Virus record (IMG/VR): IMGVR_UViG_3300023235_000008
Coordinates: 1-64,000 of that record
Direction: 5' to 3' (one strand)
Length of the DNA: 64,000 bases
Within the stretch, counting starts at the first letter, position 1. Every line of letters starts with the position of its first letter. The position numbers and the translations under genes are program-made. The notes beneath the pieces were generated by a model that made no database searches, was not told the origin of the DNA, and saw only the letters and a list, made by a program, of their open reading frames with translations. Positions 4,955-40,807 of the stretch are shown here, piece by piece.

Positions 4955-5074
4955 TACAAAACTTGGCGGAAAGAAAATGGTCAACTTCATAGAGAAGATG
5001 GTCCAGCCGCTTATCCATATGATAACTGGGAATGGAATAAAATGACTGACAAAGAACATGGTATTTTGGAATAA
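4955..5074 (+). pseudogene. Chimeric remnant: HRxDGPA repeat fused to a WEWN cassette end
   Basis: Reads TWRKENGQLHREDGPAAYPYDNWEWNKMTDKEHGILE*; the ATG at 4938 is one A short of being in frame. Confidence 0.65.
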
Positions 5075-5219
5075 GTTACGTGAACCTATCAAAAAAGGGT
5101 GTTTCAATTGTCGGTATGAGAGAACCATACAAAAAAGTATGTATGAAAAAGATTCTAAAATGATGAATAACCCTGTTTATCCAGATGATAACTGGGAATG
5201 GAATGGCAAATGTGAATAA
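5058..5219 (+). CDS. KEFW-CxxC cassette-family protein (53 aa, not in ORF track)
   Basis: MVFWNKLREPIKKGCFNC...YPDDNWEWNGKCE. Confidence 0.7.
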   Translation: MVFWNKLREPIKKGCFNCRYERTIQKSMYEKDSKMMNNPVYPDDNWEWNGKCE

Positions 5220-5224
5220 AGAAG

Positions 5225-5284
5225 ATGGTATTTTGGAATAAGTTACGTGAACCAGTTGACAACTGGGAATGGAATGGCAAATGA
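5225..5284 (+). other. Empty cassette: leader joined directly to the WEWNG end (19 aa)
   Basis: MVFWNKLREPVDNWEWNGK*; the 5' part duplicates 5058-5086. Confidence 0.75.
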
Positions 5285-5344
5285 TATAGTATTACGTGTG
5301 GTAAATGTCATGAACGCCCGACACGTATACTGGGAATGGAATAA
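5285..5344 (+). pseudogene. Cassette fragment (CGKCHE core plus WEWN end in another frame)
   Basis: TCGKCHE matches the 22286 member; TACTGGGAATGGAATAAA follows out of frame. Confidence 0.55.
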
Positions 5345-5382
5345 ACATTGACAACATTAGTAATAACTGCTAGTATACATTA

Positions 5383-5544
5383 ATGAATAAAGAAAAGTTT
5401 TGGAAGTCATTAAGTCATAACTGTGCTAATAACAGTCGAGGATACAATCAATCAGTGTATTGCAAAATCAAATCGTGCACTTCGTCGGCAAGTATGAGGG
5501 AGTATGGTGAAGTGTTTTGGGAATGGGATGGAAATGACGGATAA
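5383..5544 (+). CDS. KEFW cassette-family protein (53 aa, not in ORF track)
   Basis: MNKEKFWKSLSHNC...C...C...FWEWDGNDG; leaderless promoter TTGACA(5348)-N17-TAGTAT-N6-ATG. Confidence 0.75.
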   Translation: MNKEKFWKSLSHNCANNSRGYNQSVYCKIKSCTSSASMREYGEVFWEWDGNDG

Positions 5545-5779
5545 AGAAAAGTTTTGGAAAACGTTACGTGAACCGTCTGAGAAATCATGTAAAAACTGTA
5601 AATGGCGATATGATATAAAATCAGTTAAACTGAATGAAGATGGTTCGGAATGCACTTCAGAGGATTACGACCATATTGGTGATATTTGTGAAGCGTGTAC
5701 AATGAATAGGCACATCAGGAGTAATAATGACACATCGAATGTTATCCTGCCTAAATGGCAATGGAATAATAAACATTGA
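5534..5779 (+). CDS. KEFW-CxxC cassette-family protein
   Basis: MTDKEKFWKTLREPSEKSCKNC...CEAC...WQWNN. Confidence 0.8.
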   Translation: MTDKEKFWKTLREPSEKSCKNCKWRYDIKSVKLNEDGSECTSEDYDHIGDICEACTMNRHIRSNNDTSNVILPKWQWNNKH

Positions 5780-5786
5780 CAACACC

Positions 5787-5929
5787 ATGGAATAAAGATT
5801 AAGTGAACCTAATAAAAAAGGTTGCTTTAACTGTCGGTTCGGACTACTTATATTGTCGTAAATGCGAACAATCAGGGTTATTCATCATTTCTGTATCCAG
5901 ACAACTGGGAATGGGATGGTTTGGCATAA
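5787..5929 (+). pseudogene. Frameshifted KEFW cassette
   Basis: LSEPNKKGCFNCRF, YCRKCEQ and YPDNWEWDGLA lie in three different frames. Confidence 0.65.
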
Positions 5930-6001
5930 TCTGAAATGTCCTACTAATCGTACAGTTGGCGTGGTTGATGCACGTTGAATTGATCGTTTTGCGTATTAGG
6001 A

Positions 6002-6290: not shown

Positions 6291-6519
6291 GACTGATGAT
6301 AAGGAAGAGTTTTGGAAGTCATTGACTACTATGCCTGTTATTGAGCGTTCCTGTGATAACTGTCGTTGGTTTAATGGTAAGTTTTGTATTGAGCCTATAT
6401 CTCTCCGCAATGACATTACGACTTGTATGTATGTTTATAGCGATGTTGATTATGATTCTGCGTATGTTAGTTATACTGGTTACAGTTTACCTAAATGGGA
6501 GCGTCGGGAGAATGATTGA
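6289..6519 (+). CDS. KEFW-CxxC cassette-family protein
   Basis: MTDDKEEFWKSLTTMP...CDNC...C...C...LPKWERR. Confidence 0.8.
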   Translation: MTDDKEEFWKSLTTMPVIERSCDNCRWFNGKFCIEPISLRNDITTCMYVYSDVDYDSAYVSYTGYSLPKWERREND

Positions 6520-22089: not shown

Positions 22090-22293
22090 ATGAATAAAAA
22101 AGAACACCAGTTTTGGAATATTTTAACCAATCCGATACCAGAACCTCGTTGTTCTAACTGTAGACACCGAGAGTATTTTAATGATACATGCTATCGTCTA
22201 CGTGAAACTGGCGAAGAAGAATGCGCTATATTTCTTATTAATGTGGTCCAAACTTATCCTTTTTGGGAATGGGATGGAACTTTTGATGAATAA
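22090..22293 (+). CDS. KEFW-CxxC cassette-family protein
   Basis: MNKKEHQFWNILTNP...CSNC...C...C...FWEWDG; leaderless promoter at 22055-22083. Confidence 0.8.
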   Translation: MNKKEHQFWNILTNPIPEPRCSNCRHREYFNDTCYRLRETGEEECAIFLINVVQTYPFWEWDGTFDE

Positions 22294-22489
22294 GAATGAG
22301 TTTATCAAGGCTTTATCTGAACCGTATGATAAAAGTTGTCTGAACTGTAAGTTTGCCAGACGGTCTGGCACAATGCCAGAGGATGGATATAATAACAAGT
22401 GTGGGAAGTGTCACGAACACGATCCAGAAATGATAAATAAACCTGACCTGTATCCAGAAGACAACTGGGAATGGAACGGCGACAAATGA
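22286..22489 (+). CDS. KEFW-CxxC cassette-family protein
   Basis: MNKNEFIKALSEP...CLNC...CGKC...DNWEWNGDK. Confidence 0.8.
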   Translation: MNKNEFIKALSEPYDKSCLNCKFARRSGTMPEDGYNNKCGKCHEHDPEMINKPDLYPEDNWEWNGDK

Positions 22490-22713
22490 ATAAAGATAAA
22501 GAACAGTTTTGGGAATCAATGGTATCGCCTGAAATCGGGTGCGGCACATGTAAGCACTTAGAACCAGATGGTGCCGAAAGTTGTGGGAGGGTGCTACTAC
22601 AGGACGAGGATGAATGCATTGTTGTATCCCGCATGGTGAGTGACAGTCACCCGAAGAGTATATACCCACATTGGGAATGGGATGGAGTTAACACAGAGGA
22701 CAATGACCGATGA
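22486..22713 (+). CDS. KEFW-CxxC cassette-family protein
   Basis: MNKDKEQFWESMVSP.GCGTC...C...C...HWEWDG. Confidence 0.8.
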   Translation: MNKDKEQFWESMVSPEIGCGTCKHLEPDGAESCGRVLLQDEDECIVVSRMVSDSHPKSIYPHWEWDGVNTEDNDR

Positions 22714-23051
22714 TATGTAAAGAAGATTTTATATTTGGATTAACGGCTTCAAGTAATGACATTGAATTCGAGAAACGGCGTCGTGAATATGCCAAAAAAT
22801 ATAAAAGGGCGAAGAGAAATGCGCTGAAAGAGTTTAAAGACACACCTACCAAAGCGCTTCTCAATATGCGATATGGTTATTTTAGGAATGAGTATAGTGA
22901 TGATGATGAATATCATAGTCGGGAAGGTGTATCCGATGCGGTGTATGAGATTCTAAGCACCCGAGAGCACATTCCGAACAAACTTGAAGGCAAACGTGCC
23001 CGTCAAGCAAAGGCGAAAATGGGTAGACATAAAGGAAGACGTGATAAATGA
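22710..23051 (+). CDS. Hypothetical basic protein
   Basis: ATGA-coupled; body ends REHIPNKLEGKRARQAKAK; weak leader-like start KEDFIFGL. Confidence 0.7.
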   Translation: MICKEDFIFGLTASSNDIEFEKRRREYAKKYKRAKRNALKEFKDTPTKALLNMRYGYFRNEYSDDDEYHSREGVSDAVYEILSTREHIPNKLEGKRARQAKAKMGRHKGRRDK

Positions 23052-23218
23052 ATAAGACTGAGTTTATCAATGCGTTAAGTGAGCCTACTAAAAAAGGTTG
23101 CTTTAATTGCAAGTTCAAATACGAGAATTGGTGTGTGACGTGTCACGAACACGATCCAGAAATTATGGCAACCCTTAGTTATCAAGAAGATAACTGGGAA
23201 TGGAACGGCGACAAATGA
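23048..23218 (+). CDS. KEFW-CxxC cassette-family protein (56 aa, not in ORF track)
   Basis: MNKTEFINALSEPTKKGCFNC...CVTCHEHDPE...DNWEWNGDK. Confidence 0.8.
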   Translation: MNKTEFINALSEPTKKGCFNCKFKYENWCVTCHEHDPEIMATLSYQEDNWEWNGDK

Positions 23219-25053: not shown

Positions 25054-27568
25054 ATGATAGATGATTTAGTGGTACAGTACAGGGAATCAAATGGTGGAGA
25101 AAGCAACGGACAACACATTACTAGTAGTATCCATGATGGTCGCATTGATCAAATGGTGGAGAAAGCAACGGACAACACATTACTAGTAGTATCCATGATG
25201 GTCGCATTGATGACAATGACAATCCTCGGGATATTATCAACAGCGACAACCCAGACGAAATCCGTAGCGATGGACCCGCCAGAGGGACGATACGAGAGAC
25301 TGGTGGAAGTACGGGAACAGATGGTTCCGAACTCAGTGGCGACACTGGAAATGTTAAACGAGAAACAATCACAGATGGAGAACAAGTAAATGGAAACCCT
25401 AGCACTAGCGGCACCACTAATGACGGTGGCGATACTACAAGCACAGGAAGCACTACCGACGACGACACTGGAACAGATGAAGGTGAAGATGGAGACACAA
25501 CTGGAAACGGTGACGGTGGGGGCGACGATCCATCTTCTGGCGATGGTGATGGTTCTGGCACCAGCAATGGCAGTCTAACTGTAACAGTAACCACACGCAC
25601 ATATAGTGAAACAGAAACAGGCGATCCAGTGCTGGTTGATACTAGCACTGACGCCGTTTCGTCACGTTCTAATGACCTTGAAAACAATCGTGAAGTTGTT
25701 ACAACCGATACAACTACCACTAACACATACGAAACCACTGTAACTACAACACAATACGAAGTTGAAGTAACTACTATTACTGATGCAGATGGTAACGTGG
25801 TAAGCATGACTGAATCTGACCCGACAGTTACTAGCCAAGATTCTACCGTTGACCAAACGAGTGATGCAAGTGTTAACAGTGAAACATCATACGAAGAACC
25901 TACATACGAGACAACGCAGCAAGTCGAAACCGTAACGGTTGTAAGTGATCCTGTTACCGAAACCACGTATGAAGACGTAACTTCACGTACCAACGATTTA
26001 GAAAACAATGAAGAAGATGTAACCGTTACTAGAAATTATACGGACGAAACTTCTGTTGATAAACACGTGAAGTAGAACACGTTGATACTTTCACAACCTT
26101 TGAGAATGCGGCGGTAACGGTTGAATATGTTCAAGACGTTAACGTGGTTGTCGGTGATCCTGTGGTTGATGTTCAATCAGAAACATATACTGAGCGTGAG
26201 ATTGATTACGACAATGACCGTGAAAAACTTTCAACATATGAAGATACCACTACAACCACAACGATAACAACCACTACGACCACAACCACTACGCCTGTGT
26301 ATACTGTGACGTATTCAGATGGAACAACGGAAACAGAATATGGCAATCCTGCCGCTGATGTGGTGAGTAGTGATAACGTGACGGTTGATACAAATGTTGA
26401 AGCAATCAATACAGATTACGAATATCCAGAGATTGTTACCACAAATGATACTGTAACGTCAACTGATGTTACTGACCCTGCTGTTACGACCACGTATGAA
26501 GATGTGACTGTTACTGTTCAAAATGAAGATGGAACGACAACTGAAGTCACCACACGTGAGTTCACTGACACAACATCGGTTACAACGACTGTAACAAATA
26601 CAACGACACCAACAACCACGTTGACCTATTCCGATGGAACAACTGAAACGGTGGTTGGTGATCCGATTATTACTACCGAAACAACAACAGATGAAACATT
26701 CATTGAACGTGATGAAATCATTGACCAAGACACAACACCATTCGCTGATGAAGATGCCTTTACTGGTGTAGAAGATCAAGCTACGCAGTTTTACCTTGAT
26801 GATATTCTTGAAAATGATTATGATCTTGATGGTGATGTATTGGATTTGGTATCGTTTGATCAGCCATCTAACGGCACATTGACATACGATGCTAACGAAC
26901 AACTGTTTACATTTACGCCTGACGAGAATTGGAATGGCGAGACATCATTTGGATATACAATCACTGACGGTGACGATGAAGTAAGTTCAACAGTGAACCT
27001 AACGACTGAAGATGATTTAACTGATGAAGGTGAAGAAAACTACGAAGACCCTAATGGCGGTGGATCGGGACACGGTTCAGGTTCAGGAAGTGGATCAGGG
27101 TCTGGTTCAGGACATGGAAAGGATTCTGGCTCTGGAAAAGATAAAGATACTGGTTCAGGTTCGGGTCATGGAAAGGATTCTGGTTCTGGAAAAGGCAAGG
27201 ATAAAGATGGCAAAGATAACGACGATTCAGGACACGGAAAAGGTGGCTCAAAATCTGGAAGCGGTTCTGGGAAAGGAAGCGGCGAAGGCAAAGATTCGGG
27301 AATGGAAAAGAACGATGGGTCTGCTGAAGGCGATGCGAAGGATTCGCAAAAGAACGATGAAGAAGCCGACTTCGTATTTGGATTAGAACGTGATGGTGAT
27401 GTTCAAAACGATTGGGTGAATGCTGAAGCATCTGATGAAAGCAACGGCAATGGATGGACAGATCATACACCTACAGAAGATGATGATACAATGAACTGGG
27501 GCGATGGCGAAAGTAAAGTTGACCTGCCAGATGATTTACACGACTACGATAATAACCATAATTACTAA
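25054..27568 (+). pseudogene. Large acidic Thr/Asp-rich adhesin-like protein with a cadherin-like domain, broken by two frameshifts
   Basis: Three frames join (25054, 25149-26075, about 26064-27568) if a 62-bp duplication is removed and one A is added at 26061-63; ED...ILENDYDLDGD...FTPDENWNGETSFGYTITDG cadherin-like/Ig domain; GSGSG linker. Confidence 0.75.
25086..25209 (+). repeat. Exact 62-bp tandem duplication
   Basis: ATCAAATGGTGG...GGTCGCATTG occurs twice (25086-25147, 25148-25209). Confidence 0.95.
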
Positions 27569-28955: not shown

Positions 28956-30029
28956 ATGAAAATATCGTTTATAGGGCTTGGTAAACTTGGTTTGCCGTGC
29001 GCTGAAGAAATTGCTAAAAAAGGTCATACTGTTACCGGTTATGATATCCAAGGGTTCAAGTCAGATTTGGTTACTAGTGTGGAATCAATCAAAGATTTAA
29101 TACACCACGACTACAGTAACCGCCCTGATATTTTATTTATCGCAGTTCCAACACCCCACGAAGAATCTTATGATGGTCGATACCCAACTGCGCATTTGCC
29201 ACCAAAAGATTTTGACTACACCATTGTTAAAGATGTGATGAAAGAAGTTAATCGTTATAGTAATCGCCAGACACTGGTGGTCCTTGTATCGACCGTGCTA
29301 CCCGGCACAGTTCGCCGTGAGCTTATTGATGTGATTCCACGTAATCGCTTTGTATACAATCCATACCTAATCGCTATGGGAACAGTTGGATGGGATATGG
29401 TCAATCCAGAAATGGTAATGATTGGTACTAAAGATGGCGATGAAACAACTGAAGCACGAGAGTTGATTGATTTCTATGAAACCGTTATGGATAATGACCC
29501 ACGTTATGTTGTCGGAACATGGGATGAAATGGAATGCGTGAAGATTTTCTACAATACATTCATTTCTACAAAAATCGGTCTTGTGAATATGATTCAAGAC
29601 GTTGCTGAAAAGCAAGGCAATATCAATGTTGATGTAGTTACAGATGCCATTGCGCATTCAACACACCGTATTATGTCACCTATGTATATGAAGGCTGGCA
29701 TGGGCGATGGGGGTGCTTGTGTTAAATCTGACTTTAAAATTAATGTAAATGACGCACATATTGAAATCAGCGAGTTATATAACACATTTAACGACACTGA
29801 ATATTATATCGTAGATTCAATGAATTGGGCAGGAACAAAGAAAGACCAAAAGAAAATTGCCGATGTTACTATGCGAGAATATAGCGGCCCATTGTATACT
29901 TTTACTACCGAATCTGGAAAGAAAATATCAGTTACAAAAGATCATTTAATTCCAGTAGAACGAAAAAGAAAACGAATTATTATAAAGGCAGAAGACATCA
30001 AAGAAACAGATAAATTATTTATTTTATAG
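28956..30029 (+). CDS. ugd: UDP-glucose/GDP-mannose dehydrogenase N-half fused to a split-intein N part
   Basis: Rossmann IGLGKLG, IAVPTP, STVLPG, YNPYLI, KIFYN, GMGDGGA, then intein start C255 (29718) with block B VTKDH. Confidence 0.9.
   Translation: MKISFIGLGKLGLPCAEEIAKKGHTVTGYDIQGFKSDLVTSVESIKDLIHHDYSNRPDILFIAVPTPHEESYDGRYPTAHLPPKDFDYTIVKDVMKEVNRYSNRQTLVVLVSTVLPGTVRRELIDVIPRNRFVYNPYLIAMGTVGWDMVNPEMVMIGTKDGDETTEARELIDFYETVMDNDPRYVVGTWDEMECVKIFYNTFISTKIGLVNMIQDVAEKQGNINVDVVTDAIAHSTHRIMSPMYMKAGMGDGGACVKSDFKINVNDAHIEISELYNTFNDTEYYIVDSMNWAGTKKDQKKIADVTMREYSGPLYTFTTESGKKISVTKDHLIPVERKRKRIIIKAEDIKETDKLFIL
29718..30029 (+). mobile_element. Split intein, N fragment (103 aa)
   Basis: CVKSDFKI... 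after GDGGA; YTFTTESGKKISVTKDH; ends in a basic tail at its own stop. Confidence 0.85.
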
Positions 30030-30084
30030 GTGATAACGGTACTTGTTATGTATTTTTGTATAAATAAAGTATAGGAGATACATA

Positions 30085-30900
30085 ATGATAGTAGAAGAAT
30101 TTAGACGAAAATATTCATGGATAGATAAGAAAAAAAACAAGACTGTTTATTGTAGTACAAAGATGATCCGATTGAAATGCGACAAATGCGATCTAATACA
30201 CGAACGAGATTTATCACATTACACCAAGATGACAAAGGTTGATCTGTTTGACAAGGATTATTGTAATAAATGTTGGCGGTCGATATTAAACAACCGTCCG
30301 GAGAAAATAAAAAAGATGTCAGACGCATTAAAAAAGGTGTGGAGTGACCCAAAAAAACGACAGGAAATGTCAATAATGATGAAAAATATTTGTGCTAAAA
30401 CTGGAAGAATGATTGGAGATAATAACCCAATGAAAAATCCAGAAACACAAAAAAAGGTAGGAAAAACCCGTTCAGAACGAATGACAAAAGAAGAAAGAAA
30501 GAAATATTCATTAGGATCAAAAAAAGCATGGGAGGACGGAAAATATATAGGCGCTAATACAACAGGAAAATGTGTTTGGCATGATTACGTCCATTCGAAT
30601 GGTGAATTGTACAAAGTTCAAGGAACATGGGAATTAGCATTTATTAAATGGTTAGATAGAAACAATATGACATTTAGTTGTCATATAGGACGTATCCCTT
30701 ATGTGGATGCAAATGGTAAAGAACGAAATTATTATCCTGATTTTTATGTGAATGAATGGAAGTGCTATATAGATGTTAAATCTGATTACTGGCACAGCAA
30801 AGAACCAACCAAGTTTGATCTACTAAAAGAACAACACCCAAATAATCCAATTAAATTATTATTTAAACGAGATTTAGAAAACTTAGGAATTAAAATATGA
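30085..30900 (+). CDS. Free-standing homing-endonuclease-like protein (NUMOD-type DNA-binding repeats plus PD-(D/E)XK domain)
   Basis: GDNNPMKNPE, KKVGKT; GTWELAFIKWLD...YYPDFYV...YIDVK; own TATAAATA promoter and AGGAG SD; AT-rich. Confidence 0.8.
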   Translation: MIVEEFRRKYSWIDKKKNKTVYCSTKMIRLKCDKCDLIHERDLSHYTKMTKVDLFDKDYCNKCWRSILNNRPEKIKKMSDALKKVWSDPKKRQEMSIMMKNICAKTGRMIGDNNPMKNPETQKKVGKTRSERMTKEERKKYSLGSKKAWEDGKYIGANTTGKCVWHDYVHSNGELYKVQGTWELAFIKWLDRNNMTFSCHIGRIPYVDANGKERNYYPDFYVNEWKCYIDVKSDYWHSKEPTKFDLLKEQHPNNPIKLLFKRDLENLGIKI

Positions 30901-31418
30901 CAACTGAACGAATTACAAATATTGAAATAACTGAATACAATGGTGATGTTTACAATTTAGAAGTGGAACCCAATCATGAAAATAAAGATGATCAATTTTA
31001 TATGTGTGCTGACACTGGAATCGTAATTCATAATTGTCACCCACGTGACAACATTGCTTTACGTTGGATGGCAAAAGACCTAAATCTTGGCTACGATTTG
31101 TTTGATGCGGTAATGAATGCCCGTGAACAACAAGCCAAGAATATGGCAGACAAACTAGTTAGTTACAATCTACCTGTTGTGATTATGGGCAAAAGTTATA
31201 AGCCCGGTGTGGATTACGAAGATGGGTCAAGTTCTATTCTTGTTGGATCATATATTGATGATGTGCAATATGATGTAATCCTTGACGAACCTGCTGTATA
31301 TCTAATGGCACATCCGCAAGATACGTTTAACGAAGGCGCAGAAGATTCTGTGGTTGTTGACCCTTGGCGTCAAGTACGTTCACAACATAAGACATATTGG
31401 TATGGAAATACTAGATGA
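30897..31418 (+). CDS. ugd: Split-intein C part fused to the UDP-glucose dehydrogenase C-half
   Basis: 46-aa IntC with VYNLEV and terminal IHN (31034), then C+1 CHPRDNIAL; MGKSYKPG. Confidence 0.9.
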   Translation: MTTERITNIEITEYNGDVYNLEVEPNHENKDDQFYMCADTGIVIHNCHPRDNIALRWMAKDLNLGYDLFDAVMNAREQQAKNMADKLVSYNLPVVIMGKSYKPGVDYEDGSSSILVGSYIDDVQYDVILDEPAVYLMAHPQDTFNEGAEDSVVVDPWRQVRSQHKTYWYGNTR

Positions 31419-31612
31419 ATAAGGATGAGTTTTGGCGAGCATTGACAATCCCGCCAAATGATCAACGAACATGTTCGAACTGTATTAAGAAGAATGGTCT
31501 TGAATGCTTTATTCAAGATTTGGACATGGCGCATTGGCCAGAAAACAAGTATTGTTCACGTGGATTGCATCTTGACAATAGCGTTGATAAATGGGAATGG
31601 AATGGCGAATGA
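31415..31612 (+). CDS. KEFW-CxxC cassette-family protein
   Basis: MNKDEFWRALTIPP...CSNC...C...C...KWEWNGE; ATGA overlap at both ends. Confidence 0.8.
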   Translation: MNKDEFWRALTIPPNDQRTCSNCIKKNGLECFIQDLDMAHWPENKYCSRGLHLDNSVDKWEWNGE

Positions 31613-32355
31613 AACTAATAGCTGGTGGATGTAGCCTGATACAAGGCGCAGAGTTACAAAATACTGATAATACGTGGACTGGAAATATTGCCGAACGCCG
31701 TGGATTTGAGTATATCAACGAAGGCTATCCCGGCGCAGGTAACAGATATATCGCCAAACGCATTATTGATAGGGTATCAACGATAGACGACAATGTTGCG
31801 GTAATAGTTCAATGGTCATATCTTTCACGCTATGATTACATTTGTTCATTTGATACTAAAGAGCAGAATAGTCCTTGGTATACCCTAACACCCGCACACC
31901 TAAACTTGTCTGATAAAACGGTAGCATCGTGCTTTGGCGATGAGTATGTTCAACGCATCAAAAACTTCGGCACCGACAAGTGGGCAGAAGTTGAATATCG
32001 TATGCTTGATAGTATGAATGAACTTGACAACACACTTACACAAATCCTATTGCTACAGGAATATTTGAATAATAGAAACATCCCGTATATGTTTTCTTGT
32101 GCTGAACGATGGAACGATTTCAAACATTGGAATACATTAAAGAATAATGGTCCATCTATTTGTAGAAGTCTATACGACAGCATTGACTGGAATAAGTTTA
32201 AATGGTTTCCGCACGATTATGGCGACACAGGATTTGTATATTGGGCTAATGCACACAACTTTGAAAAGGGGCAATACGGACACCCTCTTGAAGAAGCACA
32301 TGTTGCCGCTGCTGACATTATGGAACCACATTTTATGGAGATTCTAAATGAGTAA
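31609..32355 (+). CDS. SGNH/GDSL-like conserved phage protein
   Basis: LIAGGCSL...GAGN..I...VQWS..SRYD...GHPLEEAH. Confidence 0.75.
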   Translation: MKLIAGGCSLIQGAELQNTDNTWTGNIAERRGFEYINEGYPGAGNRYIAKRIIDRVSTIDDNVAVIVQWSYLSRYDYICSFDTKEQNSPWYTLTPAHLNLSDKTVASCFGDEYVQRIKNFGTDKWAEVEYRMLDSMNELDNTLTQILLLQEYLNNRNIPYMFSCAERWNDFKHWNTLKNNGPSICRSLYDSIDWNKFKWFPHDYGDTGFVYWANAHNFEKGQYGHPLEEAHVAAADIMEPHFMEILNE

Positions 32356-32572
32356 GGAAAAGTTCTGGAAGTTATTGGCTGGTCCAACTGAAAAGTCTTG
32401 TATGAACTGTCAGTTTAAAGGCGATTATGTTACTGTTAAATGCAGTATTGATGAAAGCCCGTTTTGGGGAAATGGCAAATGGCTATGCTATAACAGAGAT
32501 GTATTGGACCACACTACATATGAACTTATTCATTATAAACAACAATGGGAATGGGATGGTGAAAGAGAATGA
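32348..32572 (+). CDS. KEFW-CxxC cassette-family protein
   Basis: MSKEKFWKLLAGPTEKSCMNC...C...C...QWEWDG. Confidence 0.8.
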   Translation: MSKEKFWKLLAGPTEKSCMNCQFKGDYVTVKCSIDESPFWGNGKWLCYNRDVLDHTTYELIHYKQQWEWDGERE

Positions 32573-33183
32573 TTATAGAAGATTATGAAAACCCGTTTGA
32601 CGCATTATTAGATTTTGAGGATATGCTGTCGGAATATACTGGCGCACCTTATGTGGTGTTAACAGATTGTTGCACACACGCATTGGAACTGTGCTTACGG
32701 CACGAATATACAATGTGGGATGTCACATTGCCAGCCCGAACATATCTAAGTATTCCGATGATGTTAAAAAAGATTAACAAGAACTATTTCTTTAAGGATA
32801 TTGATTGGGAAGAAGATGGCGAATACGATGTCATTCCAAGTGTATACGATTCGGCAAGATTATTTGAAGAAGGAATGTTCCGTCCACGTGAAAAGCAATG
32901 CCTTAGTTTTGGGCACGGAAAACCATTGCAAATCGGCGCAGGTGGTGCTATACTATTAGATAACGCTGACGACTACGCTACCTTAAAACGTATGGCATAT
33001 GATGGTCGTAACATTCATACCTATGATAAATGGGCTGACCAAAATGTATTTGATATTGGTTATCATTATCATATGCGTCCTGAATGGGCAATAAAAGGTA
33101 TGCGGATGTTGGATGATGGTGATATCAAATCCCCGCCGCCATTCAACTATCCTGATTTGCGAGATATAACTATCAATGGATGA
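32569..33183 (+). CDS. DegT/DnrJ/EryC1/StrS-like PLP aminotransferase (short form)
   Basis: TDCCTHALELCL, TYLSIP, YDSA, CLSFGHGKPL.IG.GG.ILLD, GYHYHM. Confidence 0.85.
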   Translation: MIIEDYENPFDALLDFEDMLSEYTGAPYVVLTDCCTHALELCLRHEYTMWDVTLPARTYLSIPMMLKKINKNYFFKDIDWEEDGEYDVIPSVYDSARLFEEGMFRPREKQCLSFGHGKPLQIGAGGAILLDNADDYATLKRMAYDGRNIHTYDKWADQNVFDIGYHYHMRPEWAIKGMRMLDDGDIKSPPPFNYPDLRDITING

Positions 33184-33412
33184 CAGTAAACAAGAGTTTT
33201 GGAATGCGCTAACCCAGCCAACAAAAAGAACGTGTGATAACTGTTTCTTTAACGAAGCTACGGTTAGCACCACATCGTGTTCATTGCGGGCTGGATTAAT
33301 GTGCGATGTTCATAATGATTATATTTACTCATCGGTTGCAAACACAAGTAGCAGACCTTTTAACACGTATAAAGCAAAAAGATTATGGGAATGGGATAGA
33401 AAAAATGCATAA
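33176..33412 (+). CDS. KEFW-CxxC cassette-family protein
   Basis: MDDSKQEFWNALTQPTKRTCDNC...C...C...LWEWDR. Confidence 0.8.
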   Translation: MDDSKQEFWNALTQPTKRTCDNCFFNEATVSTTSCSLRAGLMCDVHNDYIYSSVANTSSRPFNTYKAKRLWEWDRKNA

Positions 33413-33911
33413 AATAGAAAAGATGACACCGTTTTGGGACGATGAATATAAGTTTTTAGATTATCAACGAGAAGCATTCAATGACCCTGAGTTGTTGAAT
33501 CAATGGAAGAAAGACGGTTATACCCACAAATACTATGTAGGCAAGATGGCTGATTTCCGCAAGGAACAACCGTCTTGGAATAACCTAGTCAAAGAACATT
33601 TCCGTCATTGGAATGATGTTGGAACAAGTTATTATGTGATGGAAACAGGCGTTATTCTACCAGAACACGCAGACCTGTACGCACGATATAAACAGGCTTA
33701 CGAGTTATGGCACAACGAGAATATTAATCGTGCAGTGATCTTCTTAGAGGATCGAAAGCCGGGACACATCTTTGAGATTGATGGCGAATGTCTTAACTGG
33801 AAAGCTGGTGATTATGTCGTTTGGCAGAACGATAATAAGCATTCTGCCGCAAACATCGGGATTGAACCCCGATATACATTACAGGTGACAGGATGGACCA
33901 AAGCGACTTAA
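33405..33911 (+). CDS. 2OG-Fe(II) oxygenase / cupin-like protein
   Basis: ILPEHAD...RAVIFLED.KPGH..E...W..GD...H.AANIG.EPRYTLQVTG. Confidence 0.8.
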   Translation: MHKIEKMTPFWDDEYKFLDYQREAFNDPELLNQWKKDGYTHKYYVGKMADFRKEQPSWNNLVKEHFRHWNDVGTSYYVMETGVILPEHADLYARYKQAYELWHNENINRAVIFLEDRKPGHIFEIDGECLNWKAGDYVVWQNDNKHSAANIGIEPRYTLQVTGWTKAT

Positions 33912-33912
33912 A

Positions 33913-34152
33913 ATGAATAAAGAAAAGTTTTGGAAAGCATTGCGTGAACCAACACACCATAACTGCCGTAACTGTAAACATCTTGATCATTTTGCGAATA
34001 TGGGTATGGGAAATTACTCTGTTGTGTGTGACACCAAATCTGAAAATGGTCGTATGCTAGACCCTGATTGTGCTAGCATTTCACACCCAATCAGTGGAGC
34101 CACCCGAGCATTATATAAAGATAATTGGGAATGGAATGGAAAAGATGAATAA
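33913..34152 (+). CDS. KEFW-CxxC cassette-family protein
   Basis: MNKEKFWKALREP...CRNC...C...C...DNWEWNG. Confidence 0.8.
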   Translation: MNKEKFWKALREPTHHNCRNCKHLDHFANMGMGNYSVVCDTKSENGRMLDPDCASISHPISGATRALYKDNWEWNGKDE

Positions 34153-34345
34153 AGATAAAGAACTGTTTTGGGAAGAACTCTGCGCCGACCCACCAGAACC
34201 AAAACCATATATAGTATCATATTACGATGATGGACATCACGTAGAGGTAGAATATTCGGATGGAAGTATTAGTGCGTGGGGCAAAGATATAGAAGAAGAA
34301 CTGATGCGATTGTTGGTAACCGAGATTGAAGATGATAGTAAATAG
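34145..34345 (+). CDS. KEFW leader fused to an unrelated acidic body
   Basis: MNKDKELFWEELCADP, then YIVSYYDDG...; no WEW. Confidence 0.65.
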   Translation: MNKDKELFWEELCADPPEPKPYIVSYYDDGHHVEVEYSDGSISAWGKDIEEELMRLLVTEIEDDSK

Positions 34346-35351
34346 CAATAACGAATGGGATAAGTTACATGATGTGGTGGTTGGTGTATCCAACTTTGCC
34401 CGTTTCCCTACCGAAGACCCTTTATTCAGTATGCAATCCATCACTACTAAATGGAAAGAAACATCGTTGCCACAAGGAAACTTTGATAAGAAAGTTAAAA
34501 CTAAGGCGACCGAGAACCTTATGGATATCGTTCTTCGTCTTGAGCAATATGGAATCAAAACACGAGTCCCAGCGAAACTTGACTACCGTGAAACACATAA
34601 CAACTACTATTGGGAAACCGACGGTATGTATGGCTATTGTCCACGTGACGTTCTACTAGTAGTCGGCAACCGTGTCATTGAAACACCAATGGCGTATAGA
34701 AGCCGTTGGTATGAGTTCCAAGGATACGAACACATTAAACGAGATGCAATAAAGGATGGGGCAGTATGGTTCAGTGCACCTAAACCAGCATTATTCGATG
34801 ATGATTTCAAACTTGACCACGACAATAACAAGATGATACTTACCGAAGACTATCCTATCTTCGACGCAGCAAACGTATGCAGGGTGAATGATGATCTACT
34901 ATACCTTGTAAGTGAGACAGGTAACTATCGTGGCGGCGAATGGTTACAGCAAATGCTACCTGATAAGACCGTTCATATTCTTGATAACCTATATAGTTAT
35001 GCTCATATCGATAGCACTATTTGTCCGCTTAAAGAAGGATTGGTTATGCTTAATGCCAATCGTGTAAATGAAAGCAACTGCCCGAAGGTCTTTAAGGATT
35101 GGGAAAAGATTTACATTACCGAAGAAGAAGTTGTGGCACAATATTTCAAAGACTACCCGTATGCGTCTAAGTGGATTGCATTGAACTTATTGGTTATTGA
35201 GCCGGGTTTGGTGTTGATGGAATCAGGACAACCATACATTAAAAAACGACTTGAAGCGCACGGCATTGAGGTTATTGACACGCCAATGGATATGGCACGA
35301 ACACTTGGTGGAGGGATTCATTGTTGCACACTTGACTTACATCGTAGCTAA
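34332..35351 (+). CDS. Amidinotransferase (glycine/inosamine-phosphate amidinotransferase family)
   Basis: NEWDKL, YCPRD, FDAANV, HIDST, LGGGIHCCTLDL with catalytic Cys. Confidence 0.92.
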   Translation: MIVNSNNEWDKLHDVVVGVSNFARFPTEDPLFSMQSITTKWKETSLPQGNFDKKVKTKATENLMDIVLRLEQYGIKTRVPAKLDYRETHNNYYWETDGMYGYCPRDVLLVVGNRVIETPMAYRSRWYEFQGYEHIKRDAIKDGAVWFSAPKPALFDDDFKLDHDNNKMILTEDYPIFDAANVCRVNDDLLYLVSETGNYRGGEWLQQMLPDKTVHILDNLYSYAHIDSTICPLKEGLVMLNANRVNESNCPKVFKDWEKIYITEEEVVAQYFKDYPYASKWIALNLLVIEPGLVLMESGQPYIKKRLEAHGIEVIDTPMDMARTLGGGIHCCTLDLHRS

Positions 35352-36407: not shown

Positions 36408-36608
36408 ATGATTACCACCCCTATAACTCTAGCATTATTGTTAATGATTGTGACCAGCATGATTCGTGTTTTGATGAATGGGGAAAATGGCAGCAATATT
36501 GATAAGATTATGGCGATGGCGATGACCCTCGCGCCGCTAATGGTAGTCACTGGCATGGTGTTTATATCCTATGTCGTCTTCAACTTCATTTCCGCACTGA
36601 TCGGCTAA
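36408..36608 (+). CDS. Small membrane protein
   Basis: AAGGAG SD; two TM helices. Confidence 0.6.
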   Translation: MITTPITLALLLMIVTSMIRVLMNGENGSNIDKIMAMAMTLAPLMVVTGMVFISYVVFNFISALIG

Positions 36609-36898
36609 TGAACAAACAACAATTTTTCAAGGCCCTCTCAGAACCCACTGTAAAAGCCAAACGAATGAATAAAGAAGAATTCTGGCAAGCATTGAGTCAA
36701 CCTATATTTCACAGGCACACTTGCGCCTCTTGTAAATACGCCGAGCATGGTAATCCTAAAGGATGGGGGGCGGACCATGACCAGACGTACGATTACAAAC
36801 CCTGTATGGTGTGCCAAACCACGCCCCCGAACGATCTAATGCATAAAGACAATGCATGGGAATGGGATGGTAAAACTATGCCTGATGATGAGTATTAA
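36608..36898 (+). CDS. KEFW-CxxC cassette-family protein with a duplicated leader
   Basis: MNKQQFFKALSEP..MNKEEFWQALSQP...CASC...CMVC...AWEWDG. Confidence 0.8.
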   Translation: MNKQQFFKALSEPTVKAKRMNKEEFWQALSQPIFHRHTCASCKYAEHGNPKGWGADHDQTYDYKPCMVCQTTPPNDLMHKDNAWEWDGKTMPDDEY

Positions 36899-36899
36899 T

Positions 36900-37127
36900 A
36901 TGAATAGCGAAAAAGAAGAGTTCTGGAATACATTGACCGATCCTGTATTTAAGGCTTATGGATGTGGAACCTGCAAATATAAAGAAAATGTCACGAAGAA
37001 GGGGGAGTGTCGGCACCCCGATAATATACGGTATGATGTTTGCAATTCATGGATTCATCCATCCATGACTAACAATAATCTATGGGCGTGGGATGGTGAA
37101 ACCTATCACGATTATGAGTATGAATAA
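36900..37127 (+). CDS. KEFW-CxxC cassette-family protein
   Basis: MNSEKEEFWNTLTDP...CGTC...C.HP...C...LWAWDG. Confidence 0.8.
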   Translation: MNSEKEEFWNTLTDPVFKAYGCGTCKYKENVTKKGECRHPDNIRYDVCNSWIHPSMTNNNLWAWDGETYHDYEYE

Positions 37128-37332
37128 AGAAAAAGAAGAGTTCTGGAATACATTGACTGAGCCTGTATTTAATGAATATGGATGCAATACATGTAAATAT
37201 GAGAGTGGGATTGGATGCTCCCATCCCGACATTGCCGGGACAAGCCTACTGTCCAGATGCACATCCTACAAGCATCCCTCTACCACCTCTTATAACCAAT
37301 GGGAATGGGATGGCAAAACCTATAATGAATAA
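37120..37332 (+). CDS. KEFW-CxxC cassette-family protein
   Basis: MNKEKEEFWNTLTEP...CNTC...C.HP...C...QWEWDG. Confidence 0.8.
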   Translation: MNKEKEEFWNTLTEPVFNEYGCNTCKYESGIGCSHPDIAGTSLLSRCTSYKHPSTTSYNQWEWDGKTYNE

Positions 37333-37335
37333 TCG

Positions 37336-38295
37336 TTAAGAAATGTTTTCTTCAAACTCTTTTAGTCGTTTCCATATACTTCGTAGTTCTGTTATCTGTG
37401 TCCAGTTTTCTATGGGCAAACTAAACGCCTGATACACCTTCTGAAATGCATTGGACACTTGAACCAGCGTTCCCAATAAGATGGCACCGGTGAACAGGCT
37501 AGGCCCCATAACGAGGTAAGGTGCAATGACCATAAACTGCCCTAGTATATTTGTCCATAGATCAAAGTAACCATAATGATTAAATAGTCTTTGATAGTTT
37601 ACCTTAATGCCACTGAATAGATCAATCAATGTTTCTTCGTAGCCGTATCGTAGTTTGTCATCCTCTGCATACACCAACTCTTTACGGAACCGTGCTTCTA
37701 CCCTTTGGTTATTGTATTCAAGACCGGGAAGGAACCATCCAACAAACCATGAAACAATAATGCCACCAAAACTAACAGCAATGGCAAGCCATACAAGACT
37801 ACCGGGAATACTGGCAAATGGCTCAATACTCACCCCTCCGGAAAGTGTCCAAAGGATTGGAATAAAAGCAATGACCATCATAAATGCCCGAACAACTTGT
37901 AGCCCGAGCGTTTCAACGATCCGGGCGAAGCGATACGTATCTTCTTGAATACGCTGACTGGCACCTTCTATCTCCCTCATAACCAGCCGCCATCGTGGGA
38001 TGTAACTGAATGTTATTGCCTCACGCCATCGCATAGCATACATTCTGGTGAACCAGTTTGTCACCGTAACGACAGCGACATATGGCATCGCAAGATAAAA
38101 GAATGTCATCAGGCTATCCCAAAACTCTTGAATATCATGCTCAGTTGCCTTTTGTAAAATATTATAGAATGAACCATACCATTCATTTATTTGAACTGTA
38201 AGATACACTTGGAAAGATAATGAGACGAAGAGTAGTAATAAACCACCCCAAGCCCATAGACGCCATTGCGGTGAGCAGAAAAACGATTTTATCAT
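37336..38295 (-). CDS. sbmA: SbmA/BacA-like peptide transporter
   Basis: INEWYGSFYN.LQK, RWREA, IEGASQRIQEDT.RF, GLEYNNQRVEARFRKELVY.EDD, ITELRSIWKRL.EFE. Confidence 0.9.
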   Translation of the reverse strand: MIKSFFCSPQWRLWAWGGLLLLFVSLSFQVYLTVQINEWYGSFYNILQKATEHDIQEFWDSLMTFFYLAMPYVAVVTVTNWFTRMYAMRWREAITFSYIPRWRLVMREIEGASQRIQEDTYRFARIVETLGLQVVRAFMMVIAFIPILWTLSGGVSIEPFASIPGSLVWLAIAVSFGGIIVSWFVGWFLPGLEYNNQRVEARFRKELVYAEDDKLRYGYEETLIDLFSGIKVNYQRLFNHYGYFDLWTNILGQFMVIAPYLVMGPSLFTGAILLGTLVQVSNAFQKVYQAFSLPIENWTQITELRSIWKRLKEFEENIS

Positions 38296-39725: not shown

Positions 39726-40007
39726 ATGAAACTACCTATAAACTATACGAGAATCGGTGCACGCGAGCGTCGTGAAGTCCGTGAAGAATACATTCGCATT
39801 CAAGACGGAAAATGTTGGTGGTGTGAGAACGCACTTACCGATAATCCTACCACTGAGATTATGGATACAGATGTTAATCGTCGGTTATTCCCGCCGAACT
39901 TCTTTAAGCATCCTGTTCACTTACAGCATGATCATGATACTGGTATGACCGAAGGTGCGGTTCATGCCAGATGCAATGCAGTAATGTGGCAATACCACGG
40001 GAAATGA
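39726..40007 (+). CDS. Endonuclease VII-like / HNH-type small protein
   Basis: QDGKCWWC...HLQHDHDTG...GAVHARCN. Confidence 0.8.
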   Translation: MKLPINYTRIGARERREVREEYIRIQDGKCWWCENALTDNPTTEIMDTDVNRRLFPPNFFKHPVHLQHDHDTGMTEGAVHARCNAVMWQYHGK

Positions 40008-40195
40008 ACGACAGGGAAAAGTTTTGGCAGGATTTATCAAAGCCGCCGTTGAATAGACGAGGTTGCCGCAACTGTATTCATTTCGCTTCATCGGGTTTAC
40101 TAAGCGATTGTATGAATCCAGTGGGCATGACAATATGTAGTGGGGGGCGTGACGAGTATTGGGAGTGGAATGGCGAACATTGTTATGGACGATAA
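40004..40195 (+). CDS. KEFW-CxxC cassette-family protein
   Basis: MNDREKFWQDLSKPP...CRNC...C...C...YWEWNG. Confidence 0.8.
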   Translation: MNDREKFWQDLSKPPLNRRGCRNCIHFASSGLLSDCMNPVGMTICSGGRDEYWEWNGEHCYGR

Positions 40196-40314
40196 AGAAA
40201 AGTTTTGGCAGGATTTATGCAAACGCACAGATTTATTGTAAAAAACAGATGGGTCAACGCATAACTACAACATGCGAACCATGTATGTGGGAATGGGATG
40301 GAATAAGGGAATGA
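40185..40314 (+). pseudogene. Deleted/frameshifted KEFW cassette
   Basis: MDDKEKFWQDL..., then out-of-frame YC...CEPCMWEWDGIRE*. Confidence 0.7.
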
Positions 40315-40382
40315 ACATGAAAAAAATAGAAGGTGACAAGTTCTTTTGGGCAACATTAAAAGGGGAATTTGATGAGATATAA
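40311..40382 (+). other. Leader-only mini-ORF (23 aa)
   Basis: MNMKKIEGDKFFWATLKGEFDEI*; ATGA-coupled. Confidence 0.4.
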
Positions 40383-40587
40383 AATAACGACAACATTACG
40401 TGACGGTATTCGTGACAATGCTGGCGTGGCTGTAACCAATGCCCTACACGGTATGGGATTCGATATGCTAAAAAGCACCCGCATCGGTAAGGTATTTTAC
40501 ATTGAAACAGATGATGATATTAACGAGATTGTTAAACACATTGTCAATCCAGTTATGGAGGATTTTACCATTGAAAAACAAGACTAA
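40372..40587 (+). CDS. purS: Phosphoribosylformylglycinamidine synthase subunit PurS
   Basis: TLRDGIRDNAGVAV..AL..MGF...RIGK.F.I......VNPVMEDF. Confidence 0.85.
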   Translation: MRYKITTTLRDGIRDNAGVAVTNALHGMGFDMLKSTRIGKVFYIETDDDINEIVKHIVNPVMEDFTIEKQD

Positions 40588-40807
40588 GAAAGAAAAGTTT
40601 TGGGAAGCATTGCATATGCCACAAAATAAGAACTGTAGTACCTGCATATATGACGGCGATCCTACCTATAACAAAGATCATATGTATTCTGAACCAGATG
40701 GACCCTGCTTTCATCCTACTCGCACCGAAGATGAGGGGTGTTCTTTAGGTAGACCCGCCTCGAATAACTCTTTCCCGTTTTGGAAATGGGATGGGGTATC
40801 GACATAA
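40571..40807 (+). CDS. KEFW-CxxC cassette-family protein (TTG start)
   Basis: KKEKFWEALHMPQ.KNCSTC...C.HP...C...FWKWDG. Confidence 0.75.
   Translation: MKNKTKKEKFWEALHMPQNKNCSTCIYDGDPTYNKDHMYSEPDGPCFHPTRTEDEGCSLGRPASNNSFPFWKWDGVST

What the first reader, a model, noticed from the sequence alone, without database searches (positions are those of the whole stretch)
31415..34345. Cassettes occupy four consecutive junctions of a conserved sugar-modification operon
Seen: ugd-C | 31415 | SGNH-like | 32348 | DegT | 33176 | oxygenase | 33913+34145 | amidinotransferase. Each cassette begins with its own ATG overlapping the upstream stop and ends overlapping the ATG of the next enzyme. Examples are actagATGAataag...ggcgaATGAaacta and tatcaATGgat...aaaaaATGcataa. 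Deleting from ATG to ATG restores a normal coupled junction (actagATGAaacta; ACT ATC AAT GCA TAA), equivalent to a 4-5 bp aATG(A) target duplication. Inference: the insertions are precise and phenotypically silent because they preserve translational coupling. This is the best evidence that the family is mobile rather than just duplicated.
Basis: partly seen in the sequence, partly recalled or inferred. Interest (0 to 1): 0.85.

Follow-up and report, generated by a model that had tools for sequence, protein, structure and literature searches.

The report
Small-gene cassettes wedged between phage enzymes
Five small genes from a much-expanded, undescribed phage family of cysteine-rich proteins sit exactly between the enzymes of a sugar-modification operon; related phages have those same joints empty, showing how phage genomes can add or lose genes without breaking an operon.

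Summary
The window is the first 64 kb of a 230-kb T4-like metagenomic phage (phage A). Five small ORFs (31415, 32348, 33176, 33913, 34145) fill all four joints of the operon ugd-C | DUF6071/SGNH | DegT-like | oxygenase | amidinotransferase. Four belong to an unannotated family with the pattern MNKEEFWxxLxxP…CxxC…C…C…WEW(D/N)G. The window holds about 30 copies or fragments, and 246 clusters exist in public metagenomes. The fifth ORF has only the family head.

Outgroups join oxygenase|amidinotransferase by ATGA.

"Mobile" needs qualifying.
- Four of the five cassettes have orthologues at the same joints in relative B, with saturated dS, so they are old.
- 14 assemblies of phage A show no allele without a cassette.
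- There are no inverted repeats, no transposase and no near-identical copies.
- The "target duplication" is just the start codon.

The turnover I could document is recombination through the conserved head. Two 99%-identical phages differ by one exact head-to-head unit. One head has been converted between distant loci. In-frame internal deletions leave head+tail mini-ORFs.

Verdict: real, precise, translationally coupled plug-in cassettes, a new variant of moron/PeSL-type phage gene turnover. The protein's function is unknown.

The parts
31415..31612 (+). cas1: full family member (65 aa) between ugd-C and the DUF6071/SGNH-like gene, with ATGA overlaps at both ends
   Evidence: E = 7.8e-14. The site is empty in phage C. 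No orthologue in phage B.
32348..32572 (+). cas2: full family member (74 aa) between SGNH-like and DegT-like; 8-nt overlap upstream, ATGA downstream
   Evidence: E = 5.5e-20. Orthologue in B at L031:1172-1420, 50% aa identity. dN/dS about 0.33.
33176..33412 (+). cas3: full family member (78 aa) between DegT-like and the oxygenase; 8-nt overlaps at both ends
   Evidence: E = 1.1e-22. Orthologue in B at L031:2177-2407, 47%. The site is empty in C.
33913..34152 (+). cas4: full family member (79 aa) 1 nt after the oxygenase stop; its head is 59/60 nt identical to a distant paralogue
   Evidence: E = 1.3e-23. Orthologue in B at 73%. Mosaic head.
34145..34345 (+). cas5: head-only small gene (66 aa; MNKDKELFW head, no Cys, no WEWDG tail); overlaps cas4 by 8 nt and the amidinotransferase by 14 nt
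   Evidence: Orthologue in B at 51%. Its 27-30-nt head is 97-100% identical to the heads at 22486 and 23700.
30897..31418 (+). Intein C-part plus ugd C-terminal half; left flank of joint 1
   Evidence: The C-terminus (..TR*) is the same in A and C.
31609..32355 (+). DUF6071/SGNH-like gene
   Evidence: 55% identical to the copy in C. Absent from B.
32569..33183 (+). Short DegT-like gene (204 aa)
   Evidence: Conserved at similar length in A, B and C.
33405..33911 (+). Asp/Arg-hydroxylase-like cupin oxygenase
34332..35351 (+). Amidinotransferase/ADI-like gene (phrog_25854); its N-terminus MI.NS.NEWD is conserved from the outgroups
36608..37332 (+). Tandem array of three family members plus a fused extra head, ending against the convergent SbmA/BacA gene. 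B has its own array at the same place and C has none.
22090..23218 (+). Array of four family members, with one unrelated 113-aa ORF in between
5046..5930 (+). Array of intact, truncated and decayed copies, including a head+tail mini-cassette at 5225-5284 (MVFWNKLREPVDNWEWNGK)
40004..40807 (+). Further family members (40004-40195; fragment 40153-40314; 40571-40807) directly after an Endonuclease-VII-like ORF

Best explanation
The five ORFs are promoter-less, single-gene cassettes of a small protein family that has expanded in this phage lineage. The family has an N-terminal helix K-E-x-F-W-x-x-L-x-x-P, a CxxC…C…C set that probably binds zinc, a hypervariable middle and a C-terminal W-E-W-D/N-G.

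Each cassette lies exactly between the stop of one gene and the start of the next, so it is transcribed with the operon and translated by termination-reinitiation coupling.

The usual head, ATGA(A/G)TAA, carries stop codons in both other reading frames. It therefore ends the upstream gene. The tail runs into an ATGA or ATGNNTAA overlap with the next start codon. As a result, a unit can be added or removed without changing either neighbour's protein.

A joint is first seeded by rare illegitimate recombination at a start/stop overlap (inferred). Once a cassette is present, numbers and identities change by homologous recombination through the 25-60-nt conserved head, and through the tail (inferred). 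This gives unit deletion or duplication, conversion between distant loci, replacement and internal in-frame deletion (shown).

In this operon the insertions are old. cas2-cas5 predate the split from relative B and evolve under purifying selection, so they act as ordinary resident genes today.

The protein's function is unknown. My best guess is a small binding protein with a variable loop, an accessory or host-interaction factor.
For: Family membership and scale.
- about 30 copies or fragments in 64 kb, all on the + strand.
- 246 clusters at E <= 1e-3 among 1.84 billion representatives.
- no Pfam or PHROG family and no match in GenBank phage records.

Empty sites.
- In C, ugdC|SGNH reads CCCGATGATTGTA, and DegT|oxy overlap directly.
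- Outgroups join oxy|amid by ATGA or ATGATTAA.
- The family is absent from the outgroup loci.

Neighbour proteins are unchanged by insertion.

Orthology and selection.
- cas2-5 are reciprocal best hits with B, while cas1 is not.
- dN/dS is 0.11-0.33.

Recombination through the head.
- L049 and L050 are 99% identical. They differ by one 197-nt head-to-head unit bounded by identical heads of about 30 nt, and by an in-frame 177-nt internal deletion that leaves a head+tail mini-ORF.
- The cas4 head is 59/60 nt identical to paralogue L011:10001 but shows roughly 8-9 differences from its B orthologue; the bodies are unrelated.
- Window 5225-5284 is an in-frame head+tail derivative of its neighbour.

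Head stops. Stop codons in both alternative frames within the first 8 nt occur in 21/30 family starts against 2/36 other genes (Fisher p = 3e-8).

Native origin and operon expression.
- Cassette GC (0.37-0.40) equals the flanks.
- No promoter or terminator excess was found.
Against: - There is no direct evidence of expression or of translational coupling.
- The first insertion into a naive joint was not observed, and ATGA offers only 4 nt of homology.
- The polarity at ugdC|SGNH and DegT|oxy rests on one relative (C), and no outgroup carries those two genes. C also holds a decayed head-only remnant after SGNH, so clean loss in C is possible.
- The documented unit indel comes from a different T4-like phage, not from phage A. 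The phage A population is clonal at these sites.
- Head and tail conservation is at the protein level. The striking G before TTT-TGG is explained by genome-wide AATT avoidance.
- The tail is only weakly Shine-Dalgarno-like.
- Structure predictions have low confidence (pLDDT 62-65), so the zinc-ribbon reading rests on the Cys pattern alone.
Confidence: 0.6

Rival explanations
1. Ancient resident genes with differential loss. The small genes were part of the operon in the common ancestor of phages A, B and C. The empty joints in C are clean deletions. Nothing has moved since.
For: - cas2-cas5 are orthologous in A and B at the same joints, with saturated dS.
- C has a start-less head-only remnant after SGNH and one family member before amid.
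- No population polymorphism exists in A.
- No outgroup can polarise joints 1-3.
Against: - Outgroups lack any cassette at oxy|amid and lack the family altogether in the loci held.
- The ugd-C joint carries non-orthologous members in A and B.
- The arrays before SbmA expanded independently in A and B and are absent in C.
- Unit-level gain or loss is seen between 99%-identical phages.
Confidence: 0.2
2. A true transposable element, a miniature element like the mycobacteriophage MPMEs, that targets AATG(A) and duplicates it.
For: - Boundaries are precise.
- ATG(A) is repeated at both ends.
- There are many copies.
Against: - No terminal inverted repeats.
- No transposase-like gene in the units.
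- Copies are 25-57% identical in protein, with no near-identical full-length pair.
- The 'duplication' is the start codon itself.
- All copies lie in the sense orientation of their operons.
- By contrast, MPME1 copies are identical 439-bp units with IR-L/IR-R and a 6-bp addition (PMC3029335).
Confidence: 0.05
3. Hitch-hiking on homing endonucleases. The many free-standing endonuclease genes in this genome make breaks whose repair copies neighbouring small genes into new places.
For: Endonuclease genes lie nearby.
- One sits between the ugd intein halves (30085-30900).
- A GIY-YIG gene is at 38395-38850.
- An Endonuclease-VII-like ORF at 39726-40007 directly abuts cassette 40004.
- A T5orf172/GIY-YIG-family gene lies upstream of the glycosyltransferase-like gene.

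Against: - None of the four operon joints has an adjacent endonuclease gene.
- B lost the ugd endonuclease but kept the cassettes.
- No cleavage sites are known.
Confidence: 0.1
4. Not genes. The small ORFs are chance frames in spacer DNA between enzymes.
For: No database annotation exists, and structure-prediction confidence is low.
Against: - dN/dS is below 1.
- W, L, P, four Cys and WxW are near-invariant across 85 diverse sequences.
- 246 clusters were found in other phages.
- The frames are intact and tightly packed.
Confidence: 0.02

Closest known systems
Morons (extra genes inserted between conserved genes of related phages; Hendrix and colleagues, from my own knowledge)
   Same: - Discrete accessory genes present between two genes that are adjacent in relatives.
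- Dispensable for the flanking functions.
   Different: - Classical morons bring their own promoter and terminator and often have foreign base composition.
- These cassettes have neither and depend on the host operon's transcript and on start/stop coupling.
- They all belong to one paralogous family native to the genome.
PeSL regulatory cassettes of T4-type phages (Arbiol et al. 2010, PMC2839356; Comeau et al. 2014, PMC4122927)
   Same: - Also in T4-like phages.
- A short conserved repeated motif flanks variable small ORFs.
- Recombination between the motifs causes insertion, deletion and replacement of single-gene modules. The head-to-head indel in L049/L050 is the analogue.
   Different: - The PeSL motif is non-coding: an early promoter plus a stem-loop terminator.
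- Here the repeated motif is coding (the N-terminal head and C-terminal tail of the protein itself).
- Here the unit is integrated at the level of translation, not transcription.
- Mini-circles were not tested.
Mycobacteriophage mobile elements MPME1/2 (PMC3029335)
   Same: Very small units (a few hundred bp) that distinguish closely related phage genomes at precise sites.
   Different: - MPMEs are identical 439-bp copies with inverted repeats and a 6-bp addition, and they can interrupt genes.
- These cassettes have no inverted repeats, are highly diverged, and respect gene boundaries.
Small zinc-ribbon / zinc-knuckle proteins
   Same: - A CxxC…C…C pattern in a 55-95-aa protein.
- Only weak, non-significant profile hits to ribosomal L36 and a MYM zinc finger.
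   Different: - No significant sequence or fold match.
- The FW…WEW aromatic clamp of the two termini and the hypervariable middle have no named counterpart that I could find.

Membership tests
Transposable element of MPME/IS type | Terminal inverted repeats at the unit ends | tested here: not met
   The repeat finder on 31300-34450 found only head and tail direct repeats. No inverted repeats sit at cassette ends.
Transposable element of MPME/IS type | Identical or near-identical copies at different sites | tested here: not met
   The best full-length paralogue pair is 57% identical in protein. DNA identity is confined to stretches of 15-60 nt in heads and tails.
Transposable element of MPME/IS type | Target-site duplication or added bases beyond what gene structure requires | tested here: not met
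   The repeated bases are the start codon plus 1-2 nt (ATGAA; AATG). One joint has no overlap at all.
Transposable element of MPME/IS type | Encoded transposase or recombinase | tested here: not met
   The unit encodes only the 55-95-aa Cys-rich protein. No Pfam hit.
Moron | Present between genes that are adjacent in related phages | tested here: met
   C has ugdC|SGNH and DegT|oxy adjacent, and the outgroups have oxy|amid adjacent.
Moron | Own promoter and terminator | tested here: not met
   Consensus scans found no excess over shuffles and no sites bracketing the cassettes. Starts overlap upstream stops. A consensus scan is a weak test.
Moron | Base composition different from the surroundings | tested here: not met
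   Cassette GC is 0.37-0.40 against 0.38-0.41 in the flanking genes.
PeSL-type modular shuffling | Conserved short repeats flanking variable ORFs, with recombination between repeats giving single-module indels | tested here: met
   A head-to-head 197-nt unit indel bounded by identical heads of about 30 nt lies between the 99%-identical L049 and L050. A converted head is seen in cas4.
PeSL-type modular shuffling | The repeat is an early promoter plus a stem-loop terminator | tested here: not met
   The repeats are coding head and tail sequences. No promoter or stem-loop was found.
PeSL-type modular shuffling | Excised mini-circles | not testable with these tools
   This needs outward-facing PCR or read-level data.
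Zinc-ribbon protein | Four conserved metal-ligand cysteines in two knuckles | tested here: met
   C20, C23 and C47 (cas1 numbering) are invariant or near-invariant in 85 sequences. The fourth Cys (C39 in cas4 numbering) is at least 90% conserved in the 30-sequence alignment.
Zinc-ribbon protein | Confident fold or significant similarity to a solved zinc ribbon | tested here: not met
   pLDDT is 64.5 and 62.5. Foldseek against PDB gave E > 6. The PDB profile search gave a best E of 0.15.
Integron gene cassette | attC-like imperfect inverted repeat at the 3' end of each cassette | tested here: not met
   No inverted repeats were found at cassette ends.

The most novel reading that the evidence does not exclude
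The conserved head and tail are more than protein termini. Together they would form a self-contained translational 'plug'. The head stops the upstream gene in either alternative frame and restarts ribosomes. The tail hands ribosomes to the next start codon. This would make the ORF a new kind of non-autonomous gene cassette that can be swapped, multiplied, emptied (head+tail mini-ORFs) or refilled at any coupled joint by head/tail homology. It would be a translation-level counterpart of PeSL cassettes and a general route by which large phages acquire genes inside essential operons.
Probability: 0.25. Interest if true: 0.75.

Novelty: new variant of a known kind. Interest (0 to 1): 0.55.

Why it matters
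Phage genomes are packed so tightly that it is unclear how new genes get into operons without damaging them. This locus gives a clean natural example.
- One operon is seen in three states of occupancy across related phages, with nucleotide-exact empty sites.
- A cassette family has start and end sequences that fit the start/stop overlaps it occupies.
- Recombination through the conserved head is directly visible.

The work also defines a sizeable, unannotated small-protein family: 246 clusters, all metagenomic, with dozens of copies in one 230-kb T4-like phage. Its conserved termini and hypervariable, cysteine-stabilised middle suggest a diversifying binding protein worth testing.

Tried and rejected
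- **Cassette-specific DNA signal in the head.** The codon before Phe ends in G in nearly all copies (AAG 11/11, GAG 9/12). I rejected this as a signal. AATT is avoided genome-wide (observed/expected 0.40). Non-family genes show the same codon-pair bias. Distant phages' family members lack it.
- **Tail as a Shine-Dalgarno site.** The G-rich TGGGAATGGGATGG lies 6-12 nt before the next ATG, but it pairs poorly with the anti-SD. I keep this only as a weak idea.
- **Structure-based function.** Two AlphaFold runs (30 and 85 sequences) gave pLDDT of 62-65. Foldseek against PDB and a PDB profile search gave nothing significant.
- **Known-family and isolate searches.** Pfam and PHROGs on 85 members, and tblastn against 50,697 GenBank phage records, found no family and no isolate carrying it.
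- **Minority alleles.** All other assemblies of phage A are 99.9-100% identical across the operon. Differences elsewhere are 21-nt and 63-nt tandem duplications unrelated to cassettes.
- **More relatives with SGNH or DegT.** Profile-based scans of IMG/VR found only A and C. The single metagenome scan added B.
- **RNA elements.** Rfam and tRNA scans of the window found nothing.
- **Nucleotide search.** Megablast of the operon against GenBank phages found no match.


Full report
**What is in the window**

The window is the first 64 kb of a 230,059-bp viral contig (IMGVR_UViG_3300023235_000008 = Ga0222634_1000013). Window and contig coordinates coincide.

The gene content points to a large aquatic T4-like myovirus. 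It includes DUF6267, ClpX, UvdE, PstS, a CCA-adding enzyme and SbmA/BacA. The nearest isolates are about 40% identical in protein: Methylophilales phage Melnitz, Pelagibacter phage HTVC008M and cyanomyoviruses.

The region of the finding is one + strand operon. It lies downstream of a divergently oriented glycosyltransferase-like gene. Its genes are:
- ugd, split by an intein;
- a DUF6071/SGNH-like gene;
- a short DegT-like gene;
- an Asp/Arg-hydroxylase-like cupin;
- an amidinotransferase/ADI-like gene.

**Checking the observation**

Eight of the nine boundaries are start/stop overlaps of 4, 8 or 14 nt. The exception is oxygenase/cas4, which has a 1-nt spacer.

Four of the ORFs belong to one family. 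It has a head M-N-K-(E/D)-(E/K)-F-W-x-x-L-x-x-P, then CxxC, two more conserved Cys in a middle of very variable length, and a tail W-E-W-(D/N)-G a few residues before the stop. A profile built from window copies scores them at E = 8e-14 to 1e-23.

The fifth ORF (34145) has the head only.

The window holds about 30 copies or fragments, all on the + strand. They cluster at 5.0-5.9, 6.3-8.2, 13, 21-23.9, 31.4-34.3, 36.6-37.3 and 40.0-40.8 kb.

**The family elsewhere**

The family has no Pfam or PHROG model, and no GenBank phage record holds it. A profile search of 1.84 billion representative proteins finds 246 clusters at E <= 0.001. All are unnamed metagenomic proteins of 53-166 aa.

The contexts I fetched are other phages:
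- a 56-kb contig with DnaB;
- a contig with a T7-like kinase;
- T4-like contigs with gp13, gp15 and sheath genes.

In these, the genes again lie in tightly packed runs of small ORFs.

Structure prediction gave only a consistent N-terminal helix (residues 3-11) at low overall confidence. No solved fold matched.

**Comparative test of the insertion idea**

I found three tiers of relatives.
- Phage B (L032, L031, L033, L008, L009): enzymes about 58-82% identical to A.
- Phage C (L018 = L034, from a 181-kb contig): about 50-77% identical.
- Outgroups (L019-L024): amidinotransferase about 40% identical.

A and B are the closest pair for every gene compared.

In C, ugd-C and SGNH are joined by a bare ATGA (…ACCCGATGATTGTA…). 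Both proteins end and begin at the same residues as in A (…TR*; M-[KI]-[LV]-I-[AG]-[GA]-G-C-S). Removing 31415-31608 from A recreates this architecture to the nucleotide.

Also in C, DegT and the oxygenase overlap directly. DegT ends two codons after the conserved I-T-I, as it would in A after an ATG-to-ATG deletion. The oxygenase keeps nine codons before its conserved Trp in both phages.

The same position in ACTAT|TG serves as the start codon of the oxygenase in C, of the cas3 orthologue in B (TTG), and of cas3 in A (ATG).

In three outgroups the oxygenase and amidinotransferase are joined by ATGA or ATGATTAA. A fourth leaves a short gap with no cassette. The amidinotransferase N-terminus is conserved. 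The family is absent from all outgroup loci.

So the cassettes are real, precise additions at coupled joints. At oxy|amid the direction (gain) is established.

**Limits on 'mobile'**

Several results temper the claim of mobility.
- cas2, cas3, cas4 and cas5 have reciprocal-best orthologues at the same joints in B (50, 47, 73 and 51% identity). dS is saturated and dN/dS is 0.11-0.33. They are old, selected, vertically inherited genes.
- C carries a start-less head-only remnant after SGNH and one family member before the amidinotransferase. C is therefore not naive, and clean loss at its two empty joints cannot be excluded. No outgroup has SGNH or DegT to settle this.
- The oxy|amid joint also differs by larger content. 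B and C have a sulfotransferase-like gene there, and B has several extra head-bearing small genes. A has presumably lost these.
- Fourteen independent assemblies of phage A are identical across the operon.
- There are no inverted repeats, no recombinase in the unit, no promoter or terminator signal and no compositional difference. No two copies are close to identical.
- The claimed 4-5-bp duplication is the start codon with one or two chance flanking matches.

**What does move, and how**

There is clear turnover.
- The ugd-C joint holds non-orthologous members in A and B and none in C.
- The array in front of the convergent SbmA gene has three copies in A and at least four in B. In each phage the closest pairs lie within its own array. 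C has none there.

The best mechanistic evidence comes from two 99%-identical T4-like contigs, L049 and L050. They differ by exactly one 197-nt cassette bounded by identical heads of about 30 nt (ATGAACAAAGATAAGCAGAAGTTTTGGGA). This is the signature of unequal homologous recombination or slippage between heads.

They also differ by an in-frame 177-nt deletion that reduces another cassette to a head+tail mini-ORF.

The window has the same kind of mini-ORF at 5225-5284. It is derived from its neighbour 5058-5219, with the head 29/29 and the tail 30/32 identical. A stray extra head is fused in frame at 36608.

Within genome A, nucleotides 5-64 of cas4 are 59/60 identical to a paralogue tens of kb away (L011:10001). 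They differ at roughly eight or nine positions from the B orthologue, and the two bodies are unrelated. This indicates ectopic conversion through the head after the A/B split.

Both independent internal deletions kept the reading frame. That fits selection to keep ribosomes reaching the tail overlap.

**Fit between cassette ends and joints**

Of 30 family starts, 25 begin with ATGA and 24 have a stop at nt 6-8 (typically ATGAATAA). Twenty-one have both, against 2 of 36 other genes (p = 3e-8).

In about half the copies the upstream gene actually terminates on one of these head-borne stops.

The tail ends 1-4 codons after WEW(D/N)G in an overlap with the next ATG.

I first suspected an extra DNA-level signal in the head, a G before TTT-TGG. 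It is fully explained by genome-wide avoidance of AATT. The conservation of head and tail is therefore mainly at the protein level.

**Conclusion**

The cassettes are not transposons. They are best described as promoter-less plug-in genes of a lineage-expanded small Cys-rich protein family. They are seeded rarely at start/stop overlaps. Afterwards they are multiplied, exchanged, emptied and lost by recombination through their conserved ends.

In this operon they are long-established residents. The seeding step, the expression by coupling and the protein's function are all inferred, not shown.

Noticed in passing
window 28956-31418: The ugd gene is 'fractured'. The N-half ends in an intein N-part (Pfam Intein_splicing). 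A free-standing endonuclease ORF follows (30085-30900). A second ORF then starts with the intein C-part (..VIHNC) fused to the ugd C-half. Phage C has the same layout. Phage B has the split halves 60 nt apart without the endonuclease. Outgroups L021 and L024 have an intact ugd without an intein.
   Followed up: partly
whole window: Short palindromes are strongly avoided. Observed/expected values are CGCG 0.04, GGCC 0.14, GTAC 0.28, AATT 0.40, CATG 0.44 and GATC 0.55. This is consistent with restriction-site avoidance, and it biases codon pairs (a G-ending codon before Phe).
   Followed up: partly
window ~844, ~4296, ~6815, ~11001 (+ strand): A second repeated motif, (I/L)TDP(K/R)E(Q/R)FWW.(L/M), occurs at the very C-terminus of four otherwise different ORFs (for example 268-873 and 6341-6841). 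It may mark another paralogous family or a shared terminal module.
   Followed up: no
window 23200-23703; L011 8357, 11659, 11835, 12311, 12435, 12616, 15153, 18301; L032 4469-4684, 6682-6891, 7052-7255, 7675-7959: The family head (K-E-E-F-W-x-x-L) also starts many genes with unrelated bodies, including a 167-aa ORF. Either the head is exchanged as a module, or cassettes decay into or fuse with other genes.
   Followed up: partly
L032 5278-6048 versus L031 2177-2407 and L033 958-1188: In one assembly of phage B, a frameshift in the tail of the cas3 orthologue fuses it in frame to the oxygenase. Two other assemblies keep them separate. This is either a real variant or an assembly error.
   Followed up: no
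window ~25085-25210 versus L001; L010 20131 versus L011: Population polymorphisms in phage A are small tandem duplications. A 63-nt unit is present twice in the window and once in L001, and a 21-nt unit is duplicated in L010. No cassette-level differences were seen.
   Followed up: partly
window 37336-38295 (-) and 40902-41906 (+): The phage encodes an SbmA/BacA-like inner-membrane peptide transporter (E = 1e-110; 73% identical in phage C) and a PstS-like phosphate-binding protein. The transporter is an unusual auxiliary gene for a phage.
   Followed up: no
window 38395-38850 (-), 39726-40007 (+); L001 3691-3966: Further free-standing endonuclease-type genes lie within a few kb of cassette arrays: GIY-YIG, Endonuclease VII-like and T5orf172. 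The Endo VII-like ORF overlaps the start of cassette 40004 by ATGA.
   Followed up: no
L010/L011 12767-19706 (elsewhere in the same 230-kb genome): Family members and head-only small ORFs are interleaved with three radical-SAM/SPASM enzymes. A link between Cys-rich small proteins and peptide-modifying enzymes is conceivable, but I did not examine it.
   Followed up: no
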